A stretch of DNA of 15,053 nucleotides from Octopus sinensis (lineage: Eukaryota), in contig NW_021825625.1 in NCBI RefSeq assembly GCF_006345805.1, positions 1 through 15,053 of the forward strand, given 5' to 3'. Of this stretch, positions 1,092-15,053 are shown piece by piece. Positions within the stretch are counted from its first letter, which is position 1, and the number at the start of each line of letters is the position of its first letter. The notes under the pieces were generated by a model. The model was given only the letters and a program-made list of their open reading frames with translations, was not told where the DNA came from and ran no database searches. A program made the position numbers and the translations under genes.

Positions 1092-1279
1092 TCTCTTTAC
1101 TCTTTTACTTGTTTCAGTCATTTGACTGCGGCCATGCTGGAGCACCGCCTTTAATCGAGCAACTCAACCCCGGGACTTATTCTTTGTAAGTACTTATTCT
1201 ATCGGTCTCTTTTGCCGAACCGCTAAGTAACGGGGACATAAACACACCAGCATCGGTTGAAAAACACAGACACACAAAC

Positions 1280-1316
<37 letters not shown>

Positions 1317-1480
1317 CATATATACGACAGGCTTCTTTCAGTTTCCGTCTACCAAATCCACTCACAAGGCTTTGGTCGGCCCGAGGCCATAGTAGAAGAC
1401 ATTTGCCCAAGGTGACACGCAGTGGGACTGAACCCGGAACCATGTGGTTAGTAAACAAGCTACTTACCACACAGCCACTC
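1091..1480 (-). mobile_element. Family-B SINE, near full length (tRNA-like head, internal TA/TG microsatellite, GTAAAAGA tail)
   Basis: Reverse complement is colinear with 10186-10662: B-box GGTTCAGTCCC, 'gccttgtgagtggatttggtagacggaaactgaaagaagcc', and 'ccagcatggccgcagtcaaatgactgaaacaagtaaaagagt'. Confidence 0.9.
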
Positions 1481-2433: not shown

Positions 2434-2891
2434 TTATCTTAATAATTCTGATGCGCACTCCGTACGATTTTTTCACCCTTTCGTTTTACTCTCTTTTTCT
2501 CTCTCTTATTCGTTTACCTCCTCTTTTCCCACTATTCTATCCTATTACTCTGTCACTCTCTCTCCCTCACTCCTCCTCCCTTCCTCATGTGGCTCCCACC
2601 TGACCATCGGCCATCTTTCTTTCTTTCTCTACGTTGTAGCTGGAACAGGGAAGATGTGTTCTTGTTTGTCTCCTGTCCTAGCTTGATTTACGCGTTCACC
2701 ACCACAACCTCGTTTAGGCTTAGCAGCCCTTCCTGTTTGTTTTCATTGTCCTGTTTGTGTTACCTATTTTGACCCTCCGCAAAATCCCAAATTTTATTTA
2801 ATTTACTATGATGCAAATTCTGGTAAGTGGCTCTTACTGCGCCTAGGGTTAAGCCCGTCACCTCGTCAACCGTTGAAACCGTTGAGAAAGT

Positions 2892-2940
2892 GCCTTGTGA
2901 GTAGAATTGGTAAACAGAATCTGAAAGAAGCCCGACGTAG
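2892..2940 (+). mobile_element. Family-B SINE, portion 5' of its internal microsatellite (host of the nested stack)
   Basis: 'gccttgtgagtagaattggtaaacagaatctgaaagaagcccgacgtag' matches 10290-10332 up to the point where the microsatellite normally begins. Confidence 0.7.
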
Positions 2941-2948
2941 ATAGATAA

Positions 2949-3073
2949 GTTTCTTTATTGGCCACACAGGGCTGCACACAGATGGGACAAGTTACAAGGT
3001 AGAGCTTTTCTTTTGGGGGATGAAAAAAAGGGGGTGGAGTAGGTTTTCGATCAAGAGGGATCGTAAAAGGGAA
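2949..3073 (-). mobile_element. Short 3'-terminal fragment of the Tx1-like LINE in (GATA)n
   Basis: Similar but not identical to 3409-3550. Sense strand ends AATAAAGAAAC. Flanked by short GATA (2937-2948) and long GATA (3074-3153). Confidence 0.85.
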
Positions 3074-3084
3074 GATAGATAGAC

Positions 3085-3153
<69 letters not shown>
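3074..3153. repeat. (GATA)n, about 20 units with one GACA
   Basis: Read directly from the sequence. Confidence 0.98.
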
Positions 3154-3154
<1 letters not shown>

Positions 3155-3379
3155 AGCTGGCAGAAACGTTAGCACGCCGGGCGCAATGCTTAGCGGTCTT
3201 TCGTCTGCCGTTACGTTCTGAGTTCAAATTTCGCCGAGGTCGACTTTGCCTTTCATTCTTTCGGGGTCGATAAATTAAGTACCAGTTAGGCACTGGAGTC
3301 GATGTAATCGACTTAATCCCTTTGTCTGTCCTTGTTCGTCCCCTCTATGTTTAGCCCCTTGTGGGTAATAAAGAAATAA
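3154..3379 (+). mobile_element. Family-A SINE with tail type 1 (copy 1 of the identical pair)
   Basis: A-box-like TGGCAGAAACGTTAG, B-box-like GAGTTCAAATT, core 'gactttgcctttcattctttcggggtcgataaattaagtaccag', tail ending AATAAAGAAATAA. Confidence 0.92.
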
Positions 3380-3407
3380 GATAGATAGATAGATAGATAG
3401 ATAGATA
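3380..3407. repeat. (GATA)7 at the LINE 3' junction
   Basis: Read directly from the sequence. Confidence 0.95.
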
Positions 3408-5085
3408 TGTTTCTTTATTAGCCACACAGGGCTGCACACAGATAGAACAAATTACAAGGTAGAGGTTTTCTTTTGAAGGTTTAAAAAAAAATAAAAAAAA
3501 AAAAAAAAAAAAAGGAAGGGGGAGTTTCGATCAAAAGGGATCGTAAAAGGAGAGAAAGAGGACAAAAAAAAAAAAAAAAAAAAGGGGGGGTTAAAAAAAA
3601 AAAAAGGGGGGGAGAGGAAAAAAAAATTGATCAATAGGGATCGTTATCACAGAAATGTCAATATGAAGTGTAAAGGGGAGGACAGGTGAGGTTTACCCGT
3701 GGAAAGAAAAGCCTACGGAAAAGACCACGGTAACCTCGGTCAATGAAGTCACATTTTATATTTCTTTTTTTTTTTTTTTTTTTTTTTGCAAATAAGCAAC
3801 TCTCTGTTTTCGATTTCTGGGTTCATAGGACTATGCTCAAGGTGGCTTCGTCATTCATACGTGCCATTCTTGCTACATTCACCCATCTTTTTTTAAAACA
3901 TTCGCTAGACAAAACTTGCCTCTCTACTCTCACTTTCCTTTTCAAGTGGTACTTGAAGAAGTTGATGAGAGATTGACCAGAGAGGAAAGTGTTTGTCTCC
4001 AATCCTTTCAGACGCGTCCACCAGATACATTCTTTCGCCATAGCCACAAGGATGATGAAAATAGCTCTTCCTCCCGTTTGAAGGAAGGAGGCGTGACAAT
4101 ATTGACGATAGACTCAGCTGATAAACCGACTCGTCCCACACGTGACAGCAGTTGTTCGACATAAGCCCACAGGTCGGAAATTGTTGGACACTGAACGAGT
4201 GCGTGCAGAACGGTTTCGTCGCTCTGACCGCATCTCGGGCAGGTCGGCCCCGTGTTTCTCGAGCCGTGTCTGTAGAGCTTATCCCGAACGGGTAGCGCTT
4301 CTCGGTAGCACTGCCAGGCCAGGGATCTCTGAAAGTTGTCCATGGGCCCTGGCCCGAAAGTCGTCCCGAACAGGCGGGTCAGGTACTCCTCGTCGACGTC
4401 CAGGTTCGCCCCGAGCTCGTCGTCGTACCTCCCCTCCACTAAACCCCTATAGAATGCTTTGGTTGTGTTGAAGTCACTTAAGGTCGACCCAGGACGGCAG
4501 AGTTGCTTGAGAGCAACGCGACACTCGCGGTGCCATTCGCCCTTCCTCGGCCTCTTTTTGATCCACGACTGCAGTTCGGTCATGGAGACGAGCTGCGGGA
4601 AAGCGTGCCTCACAAACGGCGACCACACCTGTTCACCGTCGTCTACATAGAGCCAGAGATGTCGCAGTCTCAGCGCGTGTCTGCGCATCATCAACCACGG
4701 CATGCCCAGCCCTCCTTTTAACGGGTGTTGACAGCAAATGGATCGCCTGACCATCGGGACGCATCCTTTCCACAAGAAGCGAAAGAGGATGCGTTGTAGT
4801 TTGGTGATGGTAGGGTCGGGACAAGGTACGACGGTCAGGCGGTAGTAGATGACGGACGCGATGTACGTGTTCGCCACCTCCGCTCGACCTTTTAGGGACA
4901 GTTTCCTCTCGGCCCATTGCCGGGCGAGAGTGACCACCCTACTCGTTATCTCGTTCCAGTTCTTCTCCACTTGGAGGTCCGGACCGAACCAGACCCCGAG
5001 CAACTCAACCGGGCCGTCGGTCCAGCGTCCCACGACGGAGGCGCTGGTGGACGGCATGGGCTTGCTTCTCCAGGTGCCTAGTCGC
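3408..5085 (-). mobile_element. 5'-truncated Tx1-clade (L1-group) non-LTR retrotransposon inserted in (GATA/TATC)n
   Basis: Encodes the post-RT region (GPVELLGVWFG, W-x2-RKLSLKGRAEVAN, LFRFLWKG, GGLG) and a CCHC zinc knuckle (CPRC-x8-H-x4-C). It has a ~415-nt pyrimidine-rich 3' UTR, AATAAA, then (TATC)n. It is visibly more GC/CpG-rich than the flanks. Confidence 0.9.

Positions 5086-5087
<2 letters not shown>
3823..5087 (-). pseudogene. C-terminal part of LINE ORF2 (RT thumb to zinc knuckle), one 1-bp frameshift near 4070
   Basis: The track ORF 4008..5312 from RLGTW onward, joined to ORF 3823..4047 by restoring one G (FKREG-RAIFIILVAMAKECIWWTR), gives one continuous reading to the stop at 3823. 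Confidence 0.85.

Positions 5088-5172
<85 letters not shown>
5086..5172. repeat. (GATA)n at the LINE 5' junction
   Basis: Read directly from the sequence. Confidence 0.98.
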
Positions 5173-5173
<1 letters not shown>

Positions 5174-5396
5174 AGCTGGCAGAAACGTTAGCACGCCGGG
5201 CGCAATGCTTAGCGGTCTTTCGTCTGCCGTTACGTTCTGAGTTCAAATTTCGCCGAGGTCGACTTTGCCTTTCATTCTTTCGGGGTCGATAAATTAAGTA
5301 CCAGTTAGGCACTGGAGTCGATGTAATCGACTTAATCCCTTTGTCTGTCCTTGTTCGTCCCCTCTATGTTTAGCCCCTTGTGGGTAATAAAGAAAT

Positions 5397-5398
<2 letters not shown>
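5173..5398 (+). mobile_element. Family-A SINE with tail type 1 (copy 2, identical to 3154-3379)
   Basis: Base-by-base comparison shows no differences; offset 2019 bp. Confidence 0.92.
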
Positions 5399-5472
<74 letters not shown>

Positions 5473-5485
5473 CAGATAGATAGAT
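5399..5485. repeat. (GATA)n with one GACA
   Basis: Read directly from the sequence. Confidence 0.98.
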
Positions 5486-5693
5486 GTGTATTTATATGCA
5501 TATTTCTATGTCTTTCCGTTTACACCTGTCCCCCAACATCTCCTGCTTGACAAACAATATTAGTTTGTGCACGTCCTCTTAACTTAGCGCTTTGACAACA
5601 GCACTGGTATCGATTCGGTCGATTAAACTCCTTGAAACCGGTGCCCCAGCATGGACGCAGTCCAAAGGTTGAGAACGAGTAAAAAGTAAAAAG
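5486..5693 (+). mobile_element. Family-B SINE 3' half (partner of 2892-2940)
   Basis: 'tgtcccccaacatc..gcttgacaa..cacgtcctcttaacttagcg...ggtgccccagcatggacgcagtc...gtaaaaagtaaaaag' is colinear with 10455-10662. Confidence 0.75.
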
Positions 5694-5734
5694 CGATTCA
5701 TTGAAATATGTCTTTTAGTGGTCGTTATAAGACA

Positions 5735-5776
5735 CACATACACGCACTCACATATGCAACATCCTACACCCACACA

Positions 5777-5822
<46 letters not shown>
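5735..5822. repeat. (CA)n microsatellite
   Basis: Read directly from the sequence. Confidence 0.9.
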
Positions 5823-5824
<2 letters not shown>

Positions 5825-6213
5825 GTCACGTACACACTTGTAGATAGTAACTGTAACCTCCATTGTCTGTATTGTAGTACATATTTCCTACTTGACCTTT
5901 TCACATGGCAACTCCACTCGGCAACAATGGTCCTGCTGTTAAATTTACACACAAAACAGTCTTTGCTCCCAGAGAGAATGAAGCTGTGATCCAGTCGACC
6001 CGTGGCTAAACAACAACAACATCAACAATAACAACAATAAGCAAACAAACAATGTGAAGGATATTTCATTGAGGGATATCGCACTCACACAAACGCACGT
6101 ACGCACACGTGTGTGTGTGTGTAAATTATTAAGATGGTTATTCACAACTTAGAACCGATATTCAACAAGTACAGCCGTCATTAAAGTGACGACGAACTCG
6201 AGTCAGAAAAAAT

Positions 6214-6384
6214 TCCTATTTCTTTACTGCCCACAAAGGGCTAAACACAGAGGGGACAAACAAGGACTGACAAACGGATTAAGTCGATTATATCGACCCC
6301 AGTGCGTATCTGGTACTTAATTTATCGACCCCGAAAGGATGAAAGGCAAAGTCGAACTCAAAACGTAGCGGCAGAAGAAATACC
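6214..6384 (-). mobile_element. Family-A SINE, tail type 1, 5'-truncated with an internal deletion
   Basis: Reverse complement of the 3154-3379 body and tail; lacks the segment between 'aaagtcga' and 'aactca'. Confidence 0.88.
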
Positions 6385-6493
6385 TATTTCTTTACTACCC
6401 ACAAGGGGCTAAACACAGAGGACAAATAAGGACAGACAAAGGGATTTAGTCGATTATATCGACTCCAGTGCGTAACTGGTACTTAATTTATCG
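6382..6493 (-). mobile_element. Family-A SINE, tail type 1, 3' half only
   Basis: Tail and 'gtcgattatatcgac...ctggtacttaatttatcg' are present; it is joined head-to-tail to the previous copy at 'tacc'. Confidence 0.85.
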
Positions 6494-6507
6494 CTTTTCA
6501 GAGCCCT

Positions 6508-6688
6508 ACTAATCCTTTCTATTCTAGGCGCAAAACCTGGAATCTTGGTGGGAGGGGTTAGTCGATGACATCGACCACCCCTCAGTGTTCAACTGGTACT
6601 TAATTTATCGACCATGAAAGCTGACCTCTGCGGCATTTGAACTCAGAACTTTGAACTCGCGTGGAAACGATTCTACCCGCTTGCCACC
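6508..6688 (-). mobile_element. Family-A SINE with tail type 3 (..GCGCCTAGAATAGAAAGGATT)
   Basis: Same core and B-box ('atttgaactcagaac', 'actggtacttaatttatcgacc') but a different tail. Confidence 0.75.
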
Positions 6689-6691
6689 ATT

Positions 6692-6720
6692 CAAGGCCCT
6701 AATAATAATTAGCAATATTA
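6692..6720 (-). mobile_element. Displaced continuation of the old R4-clade RLE ORF (IIIRAL, similar to 'IVIGALG')
   Basis: Minus strand att att att agg gcc ttg lies just beyond the 17-bp duplicated site, where this motif is expected after K..Y..L. Confidence 0.5.
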
Positions 6721-6730
6721 TGATCTTGCT

Positions 6731-6902
6731 TGGCACACCGGACAAAATGCTAACCGGAATTTCGTCCATCTTTACGTTCTGAGTTCAAATTCTAATAAGG
6801 TCGATTTTGCCTTTCATCTTTCAGTATCGATAAGTACCAGCTGAGCAATGCGATCGATGTAATCGACTTACCACTTCTCTAAAACTGCTGGTGTTTTACC
6901 AA
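6731..6902 (+). mobile_element. Family-A SINE, tail type 2, degraded (array unit 1)
   Basis: 'tacgttctgagttcaaatt...ggtcgattttgcctttcatc...gatcgatgtaatcgactta...ctgctggtgttttaccaaaatt'. Confidence 0.8.
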
Positions 6903-6919
6903 AATTTTAGGATCTTGCT

Positions 6920-7133
6920 AAAGCGTGCGCTGGCAGAATCATTAGCACGCCGGACAAAATGCTTCAAGGCTTTTAATCCGTCTTAATCCATCTTTACGCT
7001 CTGTGTCCACATTCCACTGAGGTTGACTTTGTCTTTCATCCCTTTCGGTGTCGATGAAATAAGTAACAGTTGAACAAGGGGGTCAACATGCCCCTCACCC
7101 GAACTTGTTGGCCTCGTGCCAAAATTTGAAATC
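6920..7133 (+). mobile_element. Family-A SINE, tail type 2 (array unit 2)
   Basis: 'ctggcagaatcattagcacgccgg...ttggcctcgtgccaaaatttgaaatc'. Confidence 0.8.
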
Positions 7134-7150
7134 AATATAAGGACCTTGCT

Positions 7151-7545
7151 AAGGCAGCGATCTACAGAATCGTTTGCACGCCAGGCATAACACTGAGCGG
7201 CATTTCGTCAACCGCTACGTTCTGAGTTCAAATTCTGCCGAGGTCGACTTTGCCTTTCATCCTTTCTGGGTCGATTAAATAAGTACCAGTTACGCACTGT
7301 GGTCGATATAATCGACTTAATTCGTCTGTCTGTCCTTGTTTGTCCCCTCTGTGTTTAGCCCCTTGTGGGCAATAAAGAAATAAGAATCGTTTGCACGCCA
7401 GACAAAACGCTGAGCGGCATTTCCTCCATCTTTAAGCTCTGATTTCAAATTCCGCCGAGGTTGACTTTACTTTTCATCCTTTTGGGGTCGATAAATTAAG
7501 CACTCTTCCTCTAAAATTAATGCCCTTGATTAAAAATTTGAAATT
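7151..7545 (+). mobile_element. Family-A SINE unit 3 (tail type 2) containing a nested tail-type-1 copy at 7185-7382
   Basis: The 19-bp direct repeat AGAATCGTTTGCACGCCAG at 7166-7184 and 7383-7401 flanks the inner copy. Confidence 0.8.
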
Positions 7546-7552
7546 AATATTA

Positions 7553-7950
7553 TGATCTTACTTTTGTGTTCTCGCACTTCGAGATTTCATACTTTAAGTC
7601 GTTATAATGCTCTACCTTATCTTTTTGGCGCTCTTTCTATTCTGGTGTTAAATCCGCCTATCACGTCGACTACAATACATAGCTTCTTCTTGTCTACGTC
7701 TACAATATCCGGTAAGCTGTATTTTATTTTTATTTCTATTTGTATACGAATCTGCCACAATAACCTCAATTCATCCTTTTTCTAAGGCTTGCATTTCTAT
7801 TCTCACAAAATGGTTGTAGCTTTGCTTTTCCCATGCGTGCAAAACTAAATTCCTAGCCAAAACCCCATTGTAGTTATGCAGCAATCTTATCATGCATACA
7901 CTTGTGTATTCATTCTGGGATAACTGCAAGTATTCCGATACAGTGTGAGC
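7553..7950 (-). mobile_element. Old, degenerate R4/Dong-clade non-LTR fragment (end of zinc knuckle plus restriction-like endonuclease)
   Basis: Manual minus-strand translation across frameshifts and stops gives HTVSEYLQLSQNEY / HDKIAA*LQW / LRLLWQIRIQIEIKIKYSLPDIVDVDKKKLCIVVDVIGGFNTRIE / KDKVEHYNDLKYEISK. This matches the ILWD..IQTD..RPDIV..D..K..KY..L pattern of RLE-type elements. Confidence 0.78.
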
Positions 7951-8190
<240 letters not shown>

Positions 8191-8236
8191 AACTATCTGG
8201 TGTATCGTGTGGGAGTCGCGATCATGTGTATATGCA

Positions 8237-8450
8237 TCTTTGTGTCTATGTTTGTCCTAGTCCCCACTGCTTGACAACCGGTATTGGTTTGTTTACGTCC
8301 CCTTAACTTAAGGGCTGAGCAACAGTGACCTAGAGAATAAGTACCAGACTTAAATAATAATTAGTGGGGTTGGTCTGTGCAACTCAAACCCATCAAAGCG
8401 ATGCCCCAGCATGGTCGCAGTCCAATGACTGAAACAAGCAAGCGATATAA
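8237..8450 (+). mobile_element. Family-B SINE 3' half
   Basis: 'tttgtgtctatgtttgtcc...gcttgacaaccggtattgg...ccccagcatggtcgcagtccaatgactgaaacaag'. Confidence 0.85.
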
Positions 8451-8459
8451 ACCTTCAAT

Positions 8460-8560
8460 ACACAGATTACATTGTGCTGTATGGTTTTTGGCCTTGGGTA
8501 GCAAATTATTACCTATTTACTTACTCCTTGAAAGTATGAAAGACGCTAATAACTCCTTCG
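8460..8560 (-). mobile_element. Possible upstream continuation of the old R4-clade ORF (SFIL...CNLC)
   Basis: Minus frame ELLASFILSRSK*IGNNLLPKAKNHTAQCNLCIEG supplies the CxxC half of the knuckle whose H half resumes at 7950. Confidence 0.4.
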
Positions 8561-8865
8561 TAATGATATTTATTCAAGTCCCCAAGAAATCTTCTCAACA
8601 CAAGACTATGATGCTCCCCCATTACTCCTGCTCATGATCAGAAATGCACATATTGTCATCCACAAGGGGACACACTCGAGTGGTTATGGACAAACAAATC
8701 TGGGGTATTGAGCAGAATATTTGCTATAACGATATTTCCGCTTCAGCAACTCAGCGTTGAATCTGTCTGAAATGTAATGGAACATACTTCAGTTTCACCC
8801 AGGTGACAAAAGCAAAGTTTGAAGGGAATAGCAGTGATTTCCTTTGGTTTCTAGATAGAAGCAGA

Positions 8866-9374
8866 TCTCTAGATATATAAAGCTGAAGTTGTCTGTGTAT
8901 AGCAGGTTTGGTAGCCTTCAACTAACACTAACTCCTCCGAGACCCTGCGGCGCAAGTTAACTAAAATTGAAAGTATAATAGAAGAAGCCTTGCTCTTCCT
9001 TCCGTAGAAGAAAAAATTCAAATCGGACCATGTTAACACCAAAAATTGTTAACATCAAAAAGGTGCTTTTTTTCTATGAAAATCCCTATTTTTTACGATT
9101 TTTTTTACTGCTGAGTCGCCATTTTATGGTGTATTTCAACCAGAAAAATGTTCACTTAAAGAGAATTACAAGCTACATAATGCAAAATTTTTACTTTTCA
9201 AAAATTCCAATTCTAAAGGGTCGAAACAAACCCGAGCAACGCCGGGCGATACTGCTAGTAAAAATGTTCACTTAAAGAGAATAACAAGCTACATAACGCA
9301 AAATTTTTACTCTTCAAAAATTCCAATTCTAAAGGGTCGAAACAAACCCGAGCAACGCCGGGCGATACTGCTAG
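8866..9374 (+). mobile_element. Non-autonomous Helitron with a tandemly duplicated 116-bp 3' end
   Basis: 5' TC preceded by host A (8865), then 'tctctagatatataaagctgaagttgtctgtgt'. The 3' hairpin CCCG(A)GC-AAC-GCCGGG lies shortly before CTAG, followed by T. The hairpin-CTAG unit occurs twice (ends 9258 and 9374). Confidence 0.75.
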
Positions 9375-10010
9375 TAGAAAATAAGGCTTACTGACCAAAG
9401 ACTAAAAAGTAGGAACATAAATTTTGTTACAGTGTTATCGTAGAAAATTTTGCACGTCTAAATATAGTTGCCTTGCTTTTGCATCGGCAGAAATGCTAAG
9501 TTTATATTTCCTACATTCCATCGTTTCTGTCAACAGTTGTGAAACATAACATGTCTGCCGGCTCTCAGATCATTCAATATGTCGTGTTAATACTTCTGTT
9601 ATGTCTCTGTATTCTGACGACGAGACAGCCGAGAAAGCTTCGAGCAAGTTTTTTATTTATATTTAAATCAGATAGCAGAATAAAATCACAAACAACGGTG
9701 ACCTTTATAGCGTCGATATTCTTGGTATAAATAGCAAACATATAAAGGAAGTTTGTTTGTAAAAGCACGCCGTCCTTTCGATCGTCGCTCGTCGTACATG
9801 AAACATATTGTACAAAGGACTGATGACAGGCAGAAGCCAGCAGTTTAACCTCTTTGCAACAACAACAAAAATGACATTGAAAGCAATATGAACAGAGCTA
9901 GTACAGTAGTTCTTCAATTGACAAAATCCCGGTCCGTCACCAAAATATTTTTTAAATATTTTTTTTCTTTTTGTTCCTTCTCGACTGCTTTTAATTTAAC
10001 TTTGTATAGG

Positions 10011-10180
10011 CGCAGGTATGTCTGTGTGGTAAGAAATTTGTTGCCCAAACACATGGTCTTGGGTTCAGTCTCACTGAGTGGCACCTTGAGCAAGTCTTTT
10101 TCTACTCTATCCCCGGGCCGGCTCAAGTCTTGTGAGTGGATTCTGTAGATGGAAACTGAAAGAAGCCTATCGTATATATA
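10011..10180 (+). mobile_element. Family-B SINE 5' half, diverged
   Basis: Head with GGTTCAGTCTC; ends at the 'gaaagaagcctatcgtatata' microsatellite start. Confidence 0.85.
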
Positions 10181-10185
10181 CGACA

Positions 10186-10662
10186 GGAGTAGCTGTGTGG
10201 TAAGTAGCTTGCTTACCAACCACATGGTTCCGGGTTCAGTCCCACTACGTGGCACCTTGGGCAATTGTCTTCTACTATAGCCTCACAAAGCCTTGTGAGT
10301 AGATTTGGTAGACGGAAACTGAAAGAAGCCGTCATATATATATACATATTAATATATATATATGTATGTATGTATGTGCGTGTTGTGTATGTATATATAT
10401 ATACATATATGTATGTGAGTGTGTGTGTGAGTATTTATGTGTGTGTGTCTTTGTGTCTGCGTTTGTTCCCCGACCATCGCTTGTCAACAGATATTGGTGT
10501 TTATGTCCCCTAAATCTAGCTCTTCGTCAAAAGAGAACCGATAGAGTAAGTACTAGGCTTACAAAGAGTCAGTCTTGGGGGCGATTTCTTCGACTAAAGA
10601 CGGTGCTCCAGCATGGCCACAGTCAAGCGACTGAAACCTGTAAAAGAGTAAAAGAGTAAGAG
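10186..10662 (+). mobile_element. Family-B SINE, near full length
   Basis: Head, internal TA/TG microsatellite (10333-10450), 3' half and (GTAAAAGA)n tail. Confidence 0.92.
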
Positions 10663-10735
10663 ATATATGTATGTATGATATATATATATGTATATACGAT
10701 ATATATTTACGTATGTGTGTGTGTGTATGTGTGTA
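10663..10735. repeat. Degenerate (TA)n/(TG)n
   Basis: Read directly from the sequence. Confidence 0.85.
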
Positions 10736-10841
10736 GAAAGGTAAGGTAGGGAGAGAGAGAGGGAGTAAGGTATACGTAAATACTGACGTATACAAAAAAC
10801 ACACCTATTTCTTTTTTCCAAATATGCCTCCCCCCCTATTC

Positions 10842-11002
10842 AGTCTTTACGCTCTGAATTAGAATACTACCGATGTCGGCTTTGCCTTTCATCTTTTCGG
10901 GGTTGATAAAATAAGTACCAGTTAAGCACTGGGGCCGATGTAATCGATTTACATCCTCTTTGAGCTTGCTGGCCTTGTGCCAGAATTTGAAATCGTTATT
11001 AT
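10842..11002 (+). mobile_element. Family-A SINE, tail type 2, 5'-truncated
   Basis: Core 'ctttgcctttcatcttttcggggttgataaaataagtaccag' and tail 'ctggccttgtgccagaatttgaaatcgttattat'. Confidence 0.85.
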
Positions 11003-11340
11003 AGCTGTGTTTGTAAATATGATTGTAAAAAAATACTTATGTTTATAAAGCTCAATGATGATCATACCCGTCTACGAATTAATACCCACCATAGCAATGT
11101 AGAGTTTATATGCGAGCGAGTATATATTATATATACATTTGCGTGAATCCATGCGTGTTATATATGCACGGCTCTATGTATGTTCGTGCATTCGGAAAAA
11201 TATGTGTGATTGTAAAGATGAAAAATACGTCTCGTTCGCTGTAATAAAAAACGGTTTACTAGGTTGATAACCCCAGCATAGACACATTTTCAGTGATAAC
11301 ACAAAGAATGTATGCTTAGTAAGCTGATATACCAGCATAT

Positions 11341-11926: not shown

Positions 11927-11930
<4 letters not shown>
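11745..11930. repeat. Fragment of a dispersed repeat (possibly a Penelope-like terminal region)
   Basis: 'attagtcgaaa...atgtcctg', 'tgtatacattc' and 'ggatgttttgcgttcttgtcccattttgtatt' are recalled from an abundant octopod repeat. Not verifiable here. Confidence 0.3.
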
Positions 11931-12502
<572 letters not shown>

Positions 12503-12889
12503 GACACCCATACCAGACTTTACTTTTTTCAATGATAACATCAGAAAAAGATACTTTGTACAAGTTTAACGCACGGCCGCTATCAATTATTCTTTTTTCA
12601 ATCAGAAACATACTTTTACTAGATTAATAACCCCAGCACAAACAACAGCGATTGGATTTCTTTTCAATAATATCACAAGGACACGTTTTTATGAGGTTCA
12701 CAATACCGACGAGATATCTTATATATTCTGCCTTTTGTTTCAATCCTACTGATGTATCGTCTACCACAGTTTAGTCAATCAACTCGACCGCAGAATTCAT
12801 GAGATTTTAAAGCCTGGAGCTTACTATATCGGTCTTATTTATTTATTCAAACTGCTAAGTTACGAGGGCGTAAAAAAGAAAAAAAAAAC

Positions 12890-12935
12890 AAAACCGGTCG
12901 TCAAGCAGTGGTCGGGGACAAATACAGACACACAC
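12890..12935 (-). mobile_element. Family-B SINE fragment just 3' of the internal microsatellite
   Basis: Reverse complement reads 'gtgtctgtatttgtccccgaccactgcttgacgaccgg'. Confidence 0.6.
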
Positions 12936-13348: not shown

Positions 13349-13433
<85 letters not shown>

Positions 13434-13515
13434 GTATATATTCGTACATATATATATATTTATGTATATATATATATATATATACATATATATGTATGTA
13501 TGTATATATATACAC

Positions 13516-13559
<44 letters not shown>

Positions 13560-13728
13560 GTATATATATATATGTGGTGTATATATGTGTATGTATGTGT
13601 ATATATATATATATATTGTGTTTTATTTGTACAAATAAATATGTATGTATATGTATATATGTATGTGCGTATATATATGTGTGTATGTGTGTATTCATTA
13701 TGTATGTATATATACATTCATAATACAT

Positions 13729-13808
<80 letters not shown>
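13349..13808. repeat. Long compound (TA)n/(TG)n array
   Basis: Read directly from the sequence. Confidence 0.98.
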
Positions 13809-13811
<3 letters not shown>

Positions 13812-13961
13812 GACGGAGTCCTTTCAGTTTCCGCCAACCAATCGACTTACAAGGCTTTGGTTGCCTCGGGGCTATAATAGAAGACACTTGCCCATGGTGC
13901 CACTCAGCTAAACTGAACCGTAGACAACATGGTCGGGAAGCATGGTACTTAACCAGACAGC
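13809..13961 (-). mobile_element. Family-B SINE 5' half, diverged
   Basis: 'tttcagtttccgccaacc...acaaggctttggttgcctcggggctataatagaagacacttgccc'. Confidence 0.8.

Positions 13962-14362: not shown

Positions 14363-14397
<35 letters not shown>
14363..14397. repeat. (TAA)n
   Basis: Read directly from the sequence. Confidence 0.98.
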
Positions 14398-14684: not shown

Positions 14685-14697
14685 AATAATAATAATG

Positions 14698-14756
<59 letters not shown>

Positions 14757-14762
14757 TATAAT
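14685..14762. repeat. (TAA)n
   Basis: Read directly from the sequence. Confidence 0.98.
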
Positions 14763-14960
14763 AGAGATTGAAAGTTTCATATTAGCGGCACAAGATCAAA
14801 GCTTGCTTACTAAAAACTACCAGGCTGACGTTCTTCAAAACGGTTCTGGCCCTAAATGCAGATTCTGCGATAAATTTGATGAAACAGTAGACCATTTCGT
14901 CTCGGGGTGTCCTGTGCTGACACCAAACGAATACAAAAATCGCAACGATAGAGTAGTACA
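14763..14960 (+). mobile_element. Internal R4/Dong-clade fragment with CCHC zinc knuckle
   Basis: EIESFILAAQDQSLLTKNYQADVLQNGSGPKCRFCDKFDETVDHFVSGCPVLTPNEYKNRNDRV contains AAQDQ, C-x2-C-x8-H-x4-C and EY..R.D. Similarity is lost after about 14960. Confidence 0.85.
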
Positions 14961-15053
14961 CTGTATTTTATATGAATAATATATAGTCTTTTGACTAACT
15001 TTTTTATACACTAGGCTACTGGTAAAAAAATTTCTATAATCTTTATTACCTTG

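What the first reader, a model, noticed from the sequence alone, without database searches (positions are those of the whole stretch)
2950..7380. SINE tail type 1 matches the 3' end of the Tx1-like LINE: candidate Tx1 LINE-SINE partner pair
Seen: the LINE terminus (reverse complement of 2950-2990), TTGTCCCATCTGTGTGCAGCCCTGTGTGGCCAATAAAGAAA, aligns without gaps to the SINE tail at 7340-7380, TTGTCCCCTCTGTGTTTAGCCCCTTGTGGGCAATAAAGAAA. Identity is 35/41, and a further CCTTGT matches upstream across a 3-nt gap. Established: SINEs often borrow the 3' end of their mobilising LINE (CR1, L2, RTE pairs), while Tx1/L1-group tail sharing is rarely reported. Inference: this SINE subfamily (five copies here) is mobilised by this Tx1 lineage. 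Caveat: the SINE in (GATA)n lies opposite in orientation to the LINE, and other tail-1 copies are not in GATA. The true partner may therefore be a related, less site-specific Tx1 family.
Basis: partly seen in the sequence, partly recalled or inferred. Interest (0 to 1): 0.8.

Follow-up and report, generated by a model that had tools for sequence, protein, structure and literature searches.

The report
Octopod SINE shares LINE 3' tail
A short parasitic repeat (SINE) in this octopod genome ends with the same ~45-50 bases as a microsatellite-targeting L1/Tx1-type LINE, the usual sign that the LINE's enzymes copy the SINE. It is a sound but fairly ordinary LINE-SINE pairing from an unusual LINE group.

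Summary
The reverse complement of 2950-2990 matches 7340-7380 at 35/41 without gaps, and local scores are 10-16 sd above dinucleotide shuffles (0 of 2000). The only non-SINE matches to the SINE tail in the window are the two LINE 3' termini, and they are co-terminal.

The LINE (fragment 2949-3079; copy 3407-5086, minus strand) belongs to the L1 superfamily. A near full-length Argonauta relative has an APE endonuclease, RT and zf-RVT, and its best solved relative is human L1 ORF2p. Five 3' junctions lie in (TATC)n or (TTA)n, and a sixth may lie in (CA)n. That is Tx1-like behaviour, but a Tx1-versus-L1 phylogeny could not be run.

The tail is conserved across LINE subfamilies and two octopod genera. 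About 20 Argonauta SINEs of at least two body types carry it. SINE-LINE tail identity (74-81%) is at least as high as LINE-LINE identity (67%), and the sequence just upstream is unrelated.

The two SINEs in (GATA)n are one insertion, copied inside a ~334-bp target-site duplication made by the LINE. So there are four independent SINE copies, not five.

Trans-mobilisation is inferred. The in-window (TATC)n subfamily is probably not the actual partner. I rate this a new member of a known kind.

The parts
2949..3079 (-). LINE copy A. A 5'-truncated 3' fragment of about 130 bp. Its last ~53 nt (2950-3002) are the shared tail, and its 3' end is followed by TTATCTATCTAC.
   Evidence: blastn of the LINE B 3' UTR; sequence; 89% identical to copy B over 92 nt.
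3073..3406 (.). Left copy of the duplicated block: (GATA)~19 + SINE + (GATA)7. It abuts the 3' end of LINE B.
   Evidence: In register with 5092-5425, with 1 mismatch at 3084.
3152..3379 (+). SINE, tail type 1, full length (228 bp). The tail is about 3327-3379. The copy lies in (GATA)n, antisense to the LINE.
3407..5086 (-). LINE copy B, 5'-truncated. It has an open C-terminal ORF2 remnant (4008-5086, 360 codons, zf-RVT) and a 3' UTR (3407-4007) with A/G runs. The shared tail is 3410-3460. (TATC)n flanks both sides in LINE orientation.
   Evidence: the ORF listing; Pfam PF13966, E 3.7e-8; homologues up to 84% identical, including Argonauta hians.
5092..5425 (.). Right copy of the duplicated block. 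It abuts the 5' end of LINE B. Together with 3073-3406 it has the geometry of a ~334-bp target-site duplication.
5171..5398 (+). SINE, tail type 1. It is 100% identical to 3152-3379, so it is the same insertion, duplicated.
6217..6384 (-). SINE, tail type 1, covering SINE positions ~44-227.
   Evidence: 83% over 184 nt; tail shown.
6385..6493 (-). SINE, tail type 1, 5'-truncated (positions 117-227). It directly abuts the previous copy.
   Evidence: 92% over 111 nt.
7165..7383 (+). It lies inside a head-to-tail SINE array.
   Evidence: 87% over 219 nt.
6730..7565 (+). Same SINE head and body with a different 3' tail ('tail 2', ...TTTGAAATCAATATTATGATCTTGC). Copies are at about 6730-6905, 6929-7140 and 7383-7565. 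Further copies lie at 10840-11000(+) and 6553-6649(-).
   Evidence: Body matches; tails read.

Best explanation
The last ~45-50 nt of this SINE family are homologous to the 3' end of a lineage of L1-superfamily, Tx1-like LINEs. These LINEs insert into microsatellites: (TATC)n in the window, and (TTA)n in Argonauta and in a JGI contig.

The most likely mechanism is the classical 'stringent' LINE-SINE partnership. The SINE RNA is probably a pol III transcript from a degenerate tRNA-like head. It presents the LINE-type tail, and the ORF2 protein (APE endonuclease + RT) of some member of this LINE lineage binds that tail. The protein then copies the RNA into nicked, AT-rich DNA by target-primed reverse transcription.

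Shown: the tail homology; its co-terminal position; its conservation across LINE subfamilies, at least two SINE body types and two genera; the L1-type architecture of the LINE; its microsatellite junctions; and recent activity of LINE copy B.

Inferred: tail recognition and trans-mobilisation, and which LINE subfamily is the partner. It is probably not the in-window (TATC)n one.
For: - **Match strength.** 35/41 ungapped, scores 10-16 sd above shuffles, 0 of 2000.
- **Specificity.** The only non-SINE matches to the SINE in the window are the two LINE 3' termini, and they are co-terminal.
- **LINE tails elsewhere.** Related LINE copies end in the same motif: Argonauta L001 at 11188 and 4847, and JGI contig L002...GCCCTTGTGGC(C/T)AATAAAAGAAAT.
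- **Argonauta SINEs.** About 20 copies of at least two body types end in GGCCCTTGTGGCTAATAGAGAAATCTA.
- **Identity pattern.** Consensus tail identity is 74-81% for the window SINE against LINEs and 67% between LINE subfamilies. The 14-16 nt upstream are 14-33% identical, which is background.
- **LINE architecture.** Exo_endo_phos + RVT_1 + zf-RVT. The best solved relative is human L1 ORF2p, E 1.5e-46 over APE through thumb.
- **Shared locus.** In Argonauta, a LINE 3' end, (TTA)18, three tandem SINEs and a full-length LINE followed by (TTA)4 all lie on one strand.
- **Target sites.** Three Argonauta SINEs have 13-15-bp TSDs starting TTTTA, TATT(G/A) and TTAAA, which resembles the TTA context of the LINE junctions.
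- **Recent activity.** LINE B has a 360-codon open ORF remnant and a TSD with 1 mismatch in 334 bp.
Against: - The LINEs are in microsatellites at every junction seen, but three of the four independent window SINE copies are not. The one that is lies antisense to the LINE.
- No convincing conserved RNA hairpin was found in the tail, unlike the eel UnaL2 paradigm.
- The sample is small: 15 kb plus 21 kb and a few short contigs. No genome-wide consensus, age profile or scan of other LINE clades was possible.
- The direction of tail transfer (LINE to SINE or SINE to LINE) is unknown.
- The window SINE head is not recognised as tRNA by ARAGORN or Rfam.
Confidence: 0.7

Rival explanations
1. The tail is a shared module, but the SINE is mobilised by something else. 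That could be a different LINE clade carrying the same or a closer tail, or a relaxed, tail-independent LINE. The similarity would then reflect past recombination or template switching, not the current partnership.
For: SINE tails are known to be exchanged as modules. Here the same head and body occur with a second tail in the window (reads). SINE copies are dispersed while the LINEs are microsatellite-bound.
Against: In 36 kb from two genera, every LINE-associated copy of this tail belongs to this one LINE lineage. The tail is kept in at least two SINE body types and in LINE subfamilies that otherwise differ, which suggests selection on it.
Confidence: 0.15
2. The transfer went the other way. 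The LINE lineage picked up its terminal ~50 nt from an abundant SINE, for example by template switching during reverse transcription. The tail would then be SINE-derived.
For: SINE copies far outnumber LINE copies (about 20 against 2 in L001). Direction cannot be read from the alignment.
Against: The tail is present in LINE subfamilies with different targets and 67% tail identity, and in two genera. It is therefore old in the LINE lineage. Even if the transfer was reversed, a shared tail still predicts the same partnership.
Confidence: 0.1
3. The similarity arises by chance or from composition, as T/G-rich sequence plus an AATAAA signal.
For: The tail contains AATAAA and is pyrimidine/T-rich.
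Against: 0 of 2000 dinucleotide shuffles reach the score. The match is co-terminal and is the only non-SINE match in the window. It is replicated in another genus. A 21-nt tail pattern gave only 6 chance hits in 241 million metagenome records.
Confidence: 0.02

Closest known systems
UnaL2 / UnaSINE1 of the eel (Kajikawa & Okada 2002), the paradigm of stringent LINE-SINE tail sharing (cited in PMC4494074 and PMC3747384)
   Same: The SINE and the LINE share about 50 nt at the extreme 3' end and are unrelated upstream. The partnership is inferred from the tail.
   Different: UnaL2 is an L2-clade LINE. From my own knowledge, it has a conserved stem-loop and terminal short repeats, and mobilisation was shown experimentally. 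Here the LINE is L1/Tx1-type, no convincing hairpin was found, and nothing has been tested at the bench.
SINEU mobilised by Tx1-Mar LINEs in crocodilians (Kojima 2015, PMC4494074)
   Same: A Tx1-group, target-specific LINE is proposed as the driver of a SINE.
   Different: In the passages I read, that inference rests on a shared insertion target (Mariner-N4_AMi) and shared U1/U2 5' heads. No shared 3' tail is mentioned there. SINEU heads are snRNA-derived. Here the evidence is the shared 3' tail, and target sharing is weak.
Monocot L1 lineage with a conserved 3' end shared with maize and sorghum SINEs (Ohshima 2012, PMC3472496; review PMC3747384)
   Same: An L1-group LINE with a specific 3' sequence that is also carried by SINEs, which is a rare stringent case within the L1 group.
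   Different: It is from plants, has a solid RNA structure in the tail, and has no microsatellite targeting.
Kibi, Koshi and crocodilian Tx1 families that target (TC)n, (TTC)n, (TTCC)n and (TTTC)n (Kojima & Fujiwara 2004, as summarised in PMC4494074)
   Same: APE-type L1/Tx1-group LINEs that insert into microsatellites in a fixed orientation.
   Different: The repeat units here are (TATC)n and (TTA)n. Clade membership is not shown by phylogeny. No SINE partner is mentioned for those families in the passages I read.
Octopus SINEs OK, OR1 and OR2 (Ohshima & Okada 1994), and the 'tRNA-Deu/tRNA-Core' and ~900 'unclassified SINE' families of octopus genomes (PMC8967140, PMC13282606)
   Same: Abundant octopod SINEs with tRNA-type heads. 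The present family may be one of them.
   Different: I could not obtain their sequences to compare. None of the octopus or mollusc papers I opened names a LINE partner for octopus SINEs.

Membership tests
Stringent-type LINE-SINE partner pair (shared 3' tail) | The SINE 3' end is homologous to the 3' end of the LINE 3' UTR, and the two are co-terminal. | tested here: met
   35/41 ungapped, extending to about 50 nt with one 3-nt gap. Both end ...AATAAAGAAA.
Stringent-type LINE-SINE partner pair (shared 3' tail) | The similarity is confined to the tail, and the rest of the SINE is unrelated to the LINE. | tested here: met
   Only SINE positions 179-225 match the LINE. Upstream columns are 14-33% identical.
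Stringent-type LINE-SINE partner pair (shared 3' tail) | The tail is conserved among copies and subfamilies of both partners in the same genomes. | tested here: met
   5 LINE tails and 18 SINE tails from the window, Argonauta and a JGI contig align, with invariant and near-invariant columns in the last 35 nt.
Stringent-type LINE-SINE partner pair (shared 3' tail) | The two have overlapping periods of activity. | tested here: inconclusive
   Both lineages are present in two genera. LINE B inserted after one SINE copy and is young (TSD 1/334 mismatch). SINE copies differ by 8-13% pairwise. No genome-wide landscape was possible.
Stringent-type LINE-SINE partner pair (shared 3' tail) | The two share target-site or TSD characteristics. 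| tested here: inconclusive
   The LINEs are in (TATC)n or (TTA)n. The SINEs are mostly dispersed. Three Argonauta SINE TSDs of 13-15 bp start T/A-rich. One Argonauta (TTA)n locus holds both LINEs and SINEs on one strand. The window SINE in GATA is antisense.
Stringent-type LINE-SINE partner pair (shared 3' tail) | Trans-mobilisation depends on the tail. | not testable with these tools
   This needs a retrotransposition assay.
Tx1 clade (L1 group) of non-LTR retrotransposons | ORF2 has an N-terminal APE-type endonuclease, RT and a C-terminal CCHC (zf-RVT) domain, with no restriction-like endonuclease. | tested here: met
   The window copy has zf-RVT. The Argonauta relative has Exo_endo_phos + RVT_1 + zf-RVT. 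The window copies themselves are 5'-truncated.
Tx1 clade (L1 group) of non-LTR retrotransposons | It belongs to the L1 group rather than to R2, CR1, RTE and so on. | tested here: met
   The best PDB relatives are human L1 ORF2p, at E 1.5e-46 over residues 6-867. R2 proteins score 1e-19 or worse.
Tx1 clade (L1 group) of non-LTR retrotransposons | It inserts at specific targets (microsatellites, small RNA genes or particular transposons). | tested here: met
   Five 3' junctions are in microsatellites: window A and B in (TATC)n, and L001 (x2) and L002 in (TTA)n. L013 may be in (CA)n. The sample is small.
Tx1 clade (L1 group) of non-LTR retrotransposons | ORF1 is of the RRM/zf-CCHC type rather than mammalian Transposase_22 (PMC5203782). 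| tested here: inconclusive
   Argonauta ORF1 (L001 5558-7477) has a CX2CX4HX4C knuckle by eye but no Pfam hit at E<0.01.
Tx1 clade (L1 group) of non-LTR retrotransposons | The RT domain clusters with reference Tx1 elements in a phylogeny (RTclass1 or Repbase). | not testable with these tools
   No labelled Tx1 or L1 references could be obtained. Three homology searches, one exhaustive search and a cluster look-up returned no clade names.
tRNA-derived SINE (SINE2), Deu-type core | [quoted passage not shown] | tested here: inconclusive
   ARAGORN found none. Rfam found none for the window SINE. The short Argonauta SINE scores 21.8 bits against tRNA, below the gathering score of 29. In the window SINE, A-box-like TTAGCACGCCGG and B-box-like GAGTTCAAATT are seen by eye only.
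tRNA-derived SINE (SINE2), Deu-type core | It is short, non-coding, multi-copy, flanked by TSDs, and shows 5' truncation. | tested here: met
   228-bp unit; 10 body matches in the window (9 independent insertions); truncated copies; TSDs of 13-15 bp in Argonauta homologues.
tRNA-derived SINE (SINE2), Deu-type core | The central domain is homologous to the Deu core. | not tested
   The resemblance of ...TTTCGGGGTCGATAAATTAAGTACCAG... to the Deu/Nin core is from memory only. No reference sequence was available. PMC8967140 reports tRNA-Deu as a main octopus SINE class.

The most novel reading that the evidence does not exclude
A microsatellite-targeting L1/Tx1-type LINE lineage is the reverse-transcriptase donor behind a large share of the octopod SINE expansion. 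At least two SINE body types in two genera carry its tail. This would be the first Tx1-group partnership based on a specific shared 3' tail. In it, the LINE's own copies are confined to microsatellites while its SINE passengers are dispersed. That would imply that target choice depends partly on the 3' read-through RNA, not on the endonuclease alone.
Probability: 0.35. Interest if true: 0.55.

Novelty: new member of a known kind. Interest (0 to 1): 0.4.

Why it matters
SINEs make up roughly 8-12% of octopus genomes, and most families are 'unclassified' (PMC13282606, PMC8967140). No LINE partner is named for them in any of the octopus or mollusc papers I opened.

Tying a widespread octopod SINE tail to an L1/Tx1-type LINE lineage gives a testable driver for that expansion. 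It also adds one of very few cases of specific tail sharing within the L1/Tx1 group. It allows better repeat annotation, for example a Tx1-end SINE class. And it raises a concrete question: how does a microsatellite-specific LINE machinery place SINEs elsewhere? The phenomenon itself, a shared LINE/SINE tail, is textbook.

Tried and rejected
- **Metagenome scan.** I scanned JGI metagenome contigs for the degenerate tail pattern CCYKTGTGGSYAATAAAGAAA to collect more copies.
- **Clade names for Tx1 versus L1.** Three homologous-protein searches, the exhaustive representative search and a cluster look-up of ten ~1290-aa hits gave no informative names. The flanks of the fish relative P0169 showed no diagnostic target.
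- **Conserved RNA hairpin in the tail.** RNAalifold gives only a 3-bp stem with about 0 kcal/mol. Single-sequence folds are no better than shuffles. I rejected this as evidence.
- **tRNA detection.** I ran ARAGORN and Rfam on the SINE head. Only the short Argonauta SINE gave a sub-threshold hit.
- **Full-text search for the SINE and LINE sequences.** Six strings, no paper. The O. vulgaris repeat paper's supplement holds no library. The octopus genome paper is not held.
- **Unequal crossing-over as the source of the two identical SINEs.** I rejected this because it would also have duplicated LINE B.
- **R4/Dong identity.** Dong is (TAA)n-specific, but I rejected it because this LINE has an N-terminal APE endonuclease and an L1-like ORF2.

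Full report
**Observation**

The window is SINE-rich, microsatellite-rich animal DNA. The nearest named protein relative of its LINE comes from the octopod Argonauta hians.

The reverse complement of 2950-2990 and 7340-7380 are identical at 35 of 41 positions without gaps. The extra CCTTGT lies upstream across a 3-nt gap. With sensitive blastn, the SINE finds its own copies and otherwise only two places in 15 kb of both strands. Those are 2950-2999 and 3410-3451, the 3' termini of two LINE copies. Local alignment scores between 70-nt LINE tails and SINE tails are 22-30, against a dinucleotide-shuffle mean of about 8 (sd 1.5). None of 2000 shuffles reached them.

**Anatomy of the locus**

Read on the minus strand, in LINE orientation, the region runs as follows:
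- (TATC)22
- SINE, antisense (5398-5171)
- (TATC)21
- LINE copy B (5086-3407)
- (TATC)7
- SINE, antisense (3379-3152)
- (TATC)19
- LINE copy A (3079-2949)
- TTATCTATCTAC, then unique DNA

LINE B keeps a 360-codon open C-terminal ORF2 remnant (4008-5086) with a zf-RVT domain and a 600-bp 3' UTR. LINE A is a 130-bp 3' fragment.

The blocks 3073-3406 and 5092-5425 are identical in register except for one base, and they abut LINE B on both sides. That is the geometry of a target-site duplication of about 334 bp made when LINE B inserted. Staggered nicks would have fallen in the GATA tract on either side of a resident SINE. Unequal crossing-over would also have duplicated LINE B, and it did not. 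So the two identical SINEs in (GATA)n are one insertion, the window holds four independent tail-1 copies, and LINE B is younger than that SINE and is recent.

The other tail-1 copies (6217-6384, 6385-6493, 7165-7383) are not in GATA. They differ from one another by 8-13%. The same SINE head and body also occur with a second, unrelated tail (about 6730-6905, 6929-7140, 7383-7565, 10840-11000).

**What the LINE is**

The window copies are truncated, so I used relatives. A 20.8-kb piece of an Argonauta hians contig (L001) carries a nearly full-length element. It has an ORF1 of 639 aa with a CX2CX4HX4C knuckle, seen by eye. Its ORF2 is split by frameshifts into an APE-endonuclease part and an RT + zf-RVT part. 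Its best solved relatives are human L1 ORF2p, at E 1.5e-46 from the endonuclease through the thumb. R2 proteins are far weaker. So it is an L1-superfamily LINE, not an R4/Dong-type element.

Five 3' junctions I could read lie in a microsatellite:
- (TATC)n for window copies A and B
- (TTA)n for two copies in L001 and for JGI contig L002

A sixth junction, L013, may lie in (CA)n.

L1-type architecture plus fixed-orientation microsatellite targeting is what the Tx1 clade is known for. Examples are Kibi, Koshi and the crocodilian Tx1 families (PMC4494074). An ORF1 with a zinc knuckle is 'consistent with the Tx1 clade' (PMC5203782). L1-Tx1 families are reported as recently active in Octopus vulgaris (PMC13282606). 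A formal Tx1-versus-L1 placement could not be done, because none of my searches returned labelled references.

**The tail is a conserved module of the LINE lineage and of several SINEs**

The Argonauta LINE ends ...TCGTCCCCTCTATGTTTTTGCCCTTGTGGCTAATAAAAGAAATAA. Against one window SINE copy (3152-3379) it scores even higher than the in-window LINE does (32 against 22-24).

In the same 20.8 kb, about 20 SINE copies of at least two body types end in GGCCCTTGTGGCTAATAGAGAAATCTA. One type is homologous to the window SINE. Another is a short element with a sub-threshold tRNA match (21.8 bits).

An alignment of 5 LINE tails and 18 SINE tails has invariant or near-invariant columns through the last ~35 nt. 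By group consensus:
- Window SINE tail against window LINE tail: 81% identical.
- Window SINE tail against (TTA)n-type LINE tails: 74%.
- The two LINE groups against each other: 67%.
- The 14-16 nt just upstream: 14-33% in SINE-LINE comparisons.

The SINE tail therefore sits inside the diversity of this LINE lineage's own tails.

**Targets**

The LINEs are microsatellite-bound, and the SINEs are mostly dispersed.

Some evidence points to shared machinery. One Argonauta locus reads LINE 3' end-(TTA)18-SINE-SINE-SINE-full-length LINE-(TTA)4, all on one strand. Three Argonauta SINEs have recognisable 13-15-bp TSDs that begin TTTTA, TATT(G/A) and TTAAA. Most SINE 3' flanks start with T, as the LINE junctions do (…AATAA|TTATTA).

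Other evidence points the other way. The single window SINE in (GATA)n is antisense to the LINEs, and GATA arrays are common here, so that co-location may be coincidence.

The LINE tail carries AATAAA 5 nt from its end and has no poly(A). LINE transcripts should therefore run into the downstream repeat and could anneal to the target. A SINE transcript would carry a different flank. This could explain the different distributions, but it is speculation.

**Mechanism and confidence**

The best explanation is a stringent-type partnership. ORF2p of some member of this lineage recognises the shared tail on SINE RNA and copies it by target-primed reverse transcription.

My confidence estimates are:
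- That the tails are homologous: about 0.95.
- That this lineage mobilises, or mobilised, the SINE: about 0.7.
- That the in-window (TATC)n subfamily is the actual partner: about 0.25.

I found no convincing conserved hairpin, so recognition, if real, may be sequence-based.

**Comparison with what is known**

Tail sharing is textbook for L2, CR1, RTE and other clades. Within the L1 group it is rare. A monocot L1 lineage shares a structured 3' end with maize and sorghum SINEs (PMC3472496, PMC3747384). The one proposed Tx1-SINE partnership, SINEU/Tx1-Mar, rests on shared target and shared 5' heads (PMC4494074). Bivalve SINE partners reported so far come from four LINE clades, two of them named Nimb and CR1-Zenon, and Tx1 does not occur in that paper (PMC11481361). 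None of the octopus or mollusc papers I opened names a LINE partner for octopus SINEs.

**Verdict**

This is a real, well-supported candidate LINE-SINE pair. It is a new member of a known kind, of moderate interest to transposon and cephalopod-genome specialists, and it rests on a small sample.

**Dead ends**

- The metagenome scan for the tail pattern.
- Clade naming.
- The flanks of a fish relative.
- Full-text search for the sequences.
- The supplement of the O. vulgaris annotation paper.

Noticed in passing
window 3073-3406 and 5092-5425, flanking 3407-5086: A 334-bp block, (GATA)~19 + a whole 228-bp SINE + (GATA)7, is repeated with one mismatch on both sides of LINE copy B. This looks like an unusually long target-site duplication, with both nicks falling in the microsatellite on either side of the SINE.
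   Followed up: yes
window 6720-7565: Four SINEs of one body type lie head-to-tail with almost no spacer. Three have 'tail 2' and one has tail 1, and the downstream members lack their first ~10 nt. Copies 6217-6384 and 6385-6493 also abut. This suggests repeated insertion at the 3' junction of resident copies, or tandem amplification.
   Followed up: partly
window 1325-1480(-), 2860-2936(+), 10000-10160(+), 10180-10330(+), 12345-12500(-), 13810-13960(-): A different SINE family ends ...GGAAACTGAAAGAAGCC(CGTCG). It is followed by a (TA)n array in five of five copies, including the 400-bp arrays at 11930-12343 and 13349-13808. A sixth copy ends exactly where the (GATA)n array that hosts the LINEs begins.
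   Followed up: no
window 1095-1260(+); reverse complement at 5500-5690, 8240-8440, 10460-10660, 12740-12920: A third SINE-like family (…CATGCTGGAGCACCGCC…) regularly lies next to (CA)n/(TG)n or mixed TA/TG arrays. Microsatellites in this window are mostly attached to SINE ends.
   Followed up: no
window 9144-9382: Two tandem copies of a 116-bp unit, 96% identical, of unknown nature.
   Followed up: no
window 14767-14976 (+): A C-terminal fragment of a second, unrelated LINE (…CRFCDKFDETVDHFVSGCP…, weak zf-RVT, E 0.0024). It is flanked by (AAT)n arrays at 14363-14397 and 14685-14763.
   Followed up: partly
L001 (Argonauta hians) 4780-11200: A LINE 3' fragment, (TTA)18, three tandem tRNA-like SINEs and a near full-length LINE followed by (TTA)4 all lie on one strand. 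It is a nest of the LINE and of SINEs that carry its tail.
   Followed up: partly
L018/L019 (ENA ERZ21867824, contig ctg88761c): A 39%-identical relative of the LINE (ORF1 718 aa, ORF2 1155 aa, 732 cluster members) lies in a head-to-tail tandem array with a 6.8-kb period.
   Followed up: no
L009/L010 (Metynnis hypsauchen) 2300-2500 and 7220-7400: A fish relative has a fused ZCCHC3-like RBD + CCHC + APE + RT reading frame. It carries the same ~190 bp in its 5' UTR and just after its stop codon, a terminal direct repeat that is unusual for a LINE.
   Followed up: no
P0003 (NCBI 'MAG: Herbaspirillum sp.'), L002/L012 (JGI metagenomes 3300045642 and 3300045673): Octopod-type LINE ORF2 fragments, 63-74% identical to the window's, are filed under a bacterial MAG and in metagenomes. 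This is host DNA contamination in those data sets.
   Followed up: no
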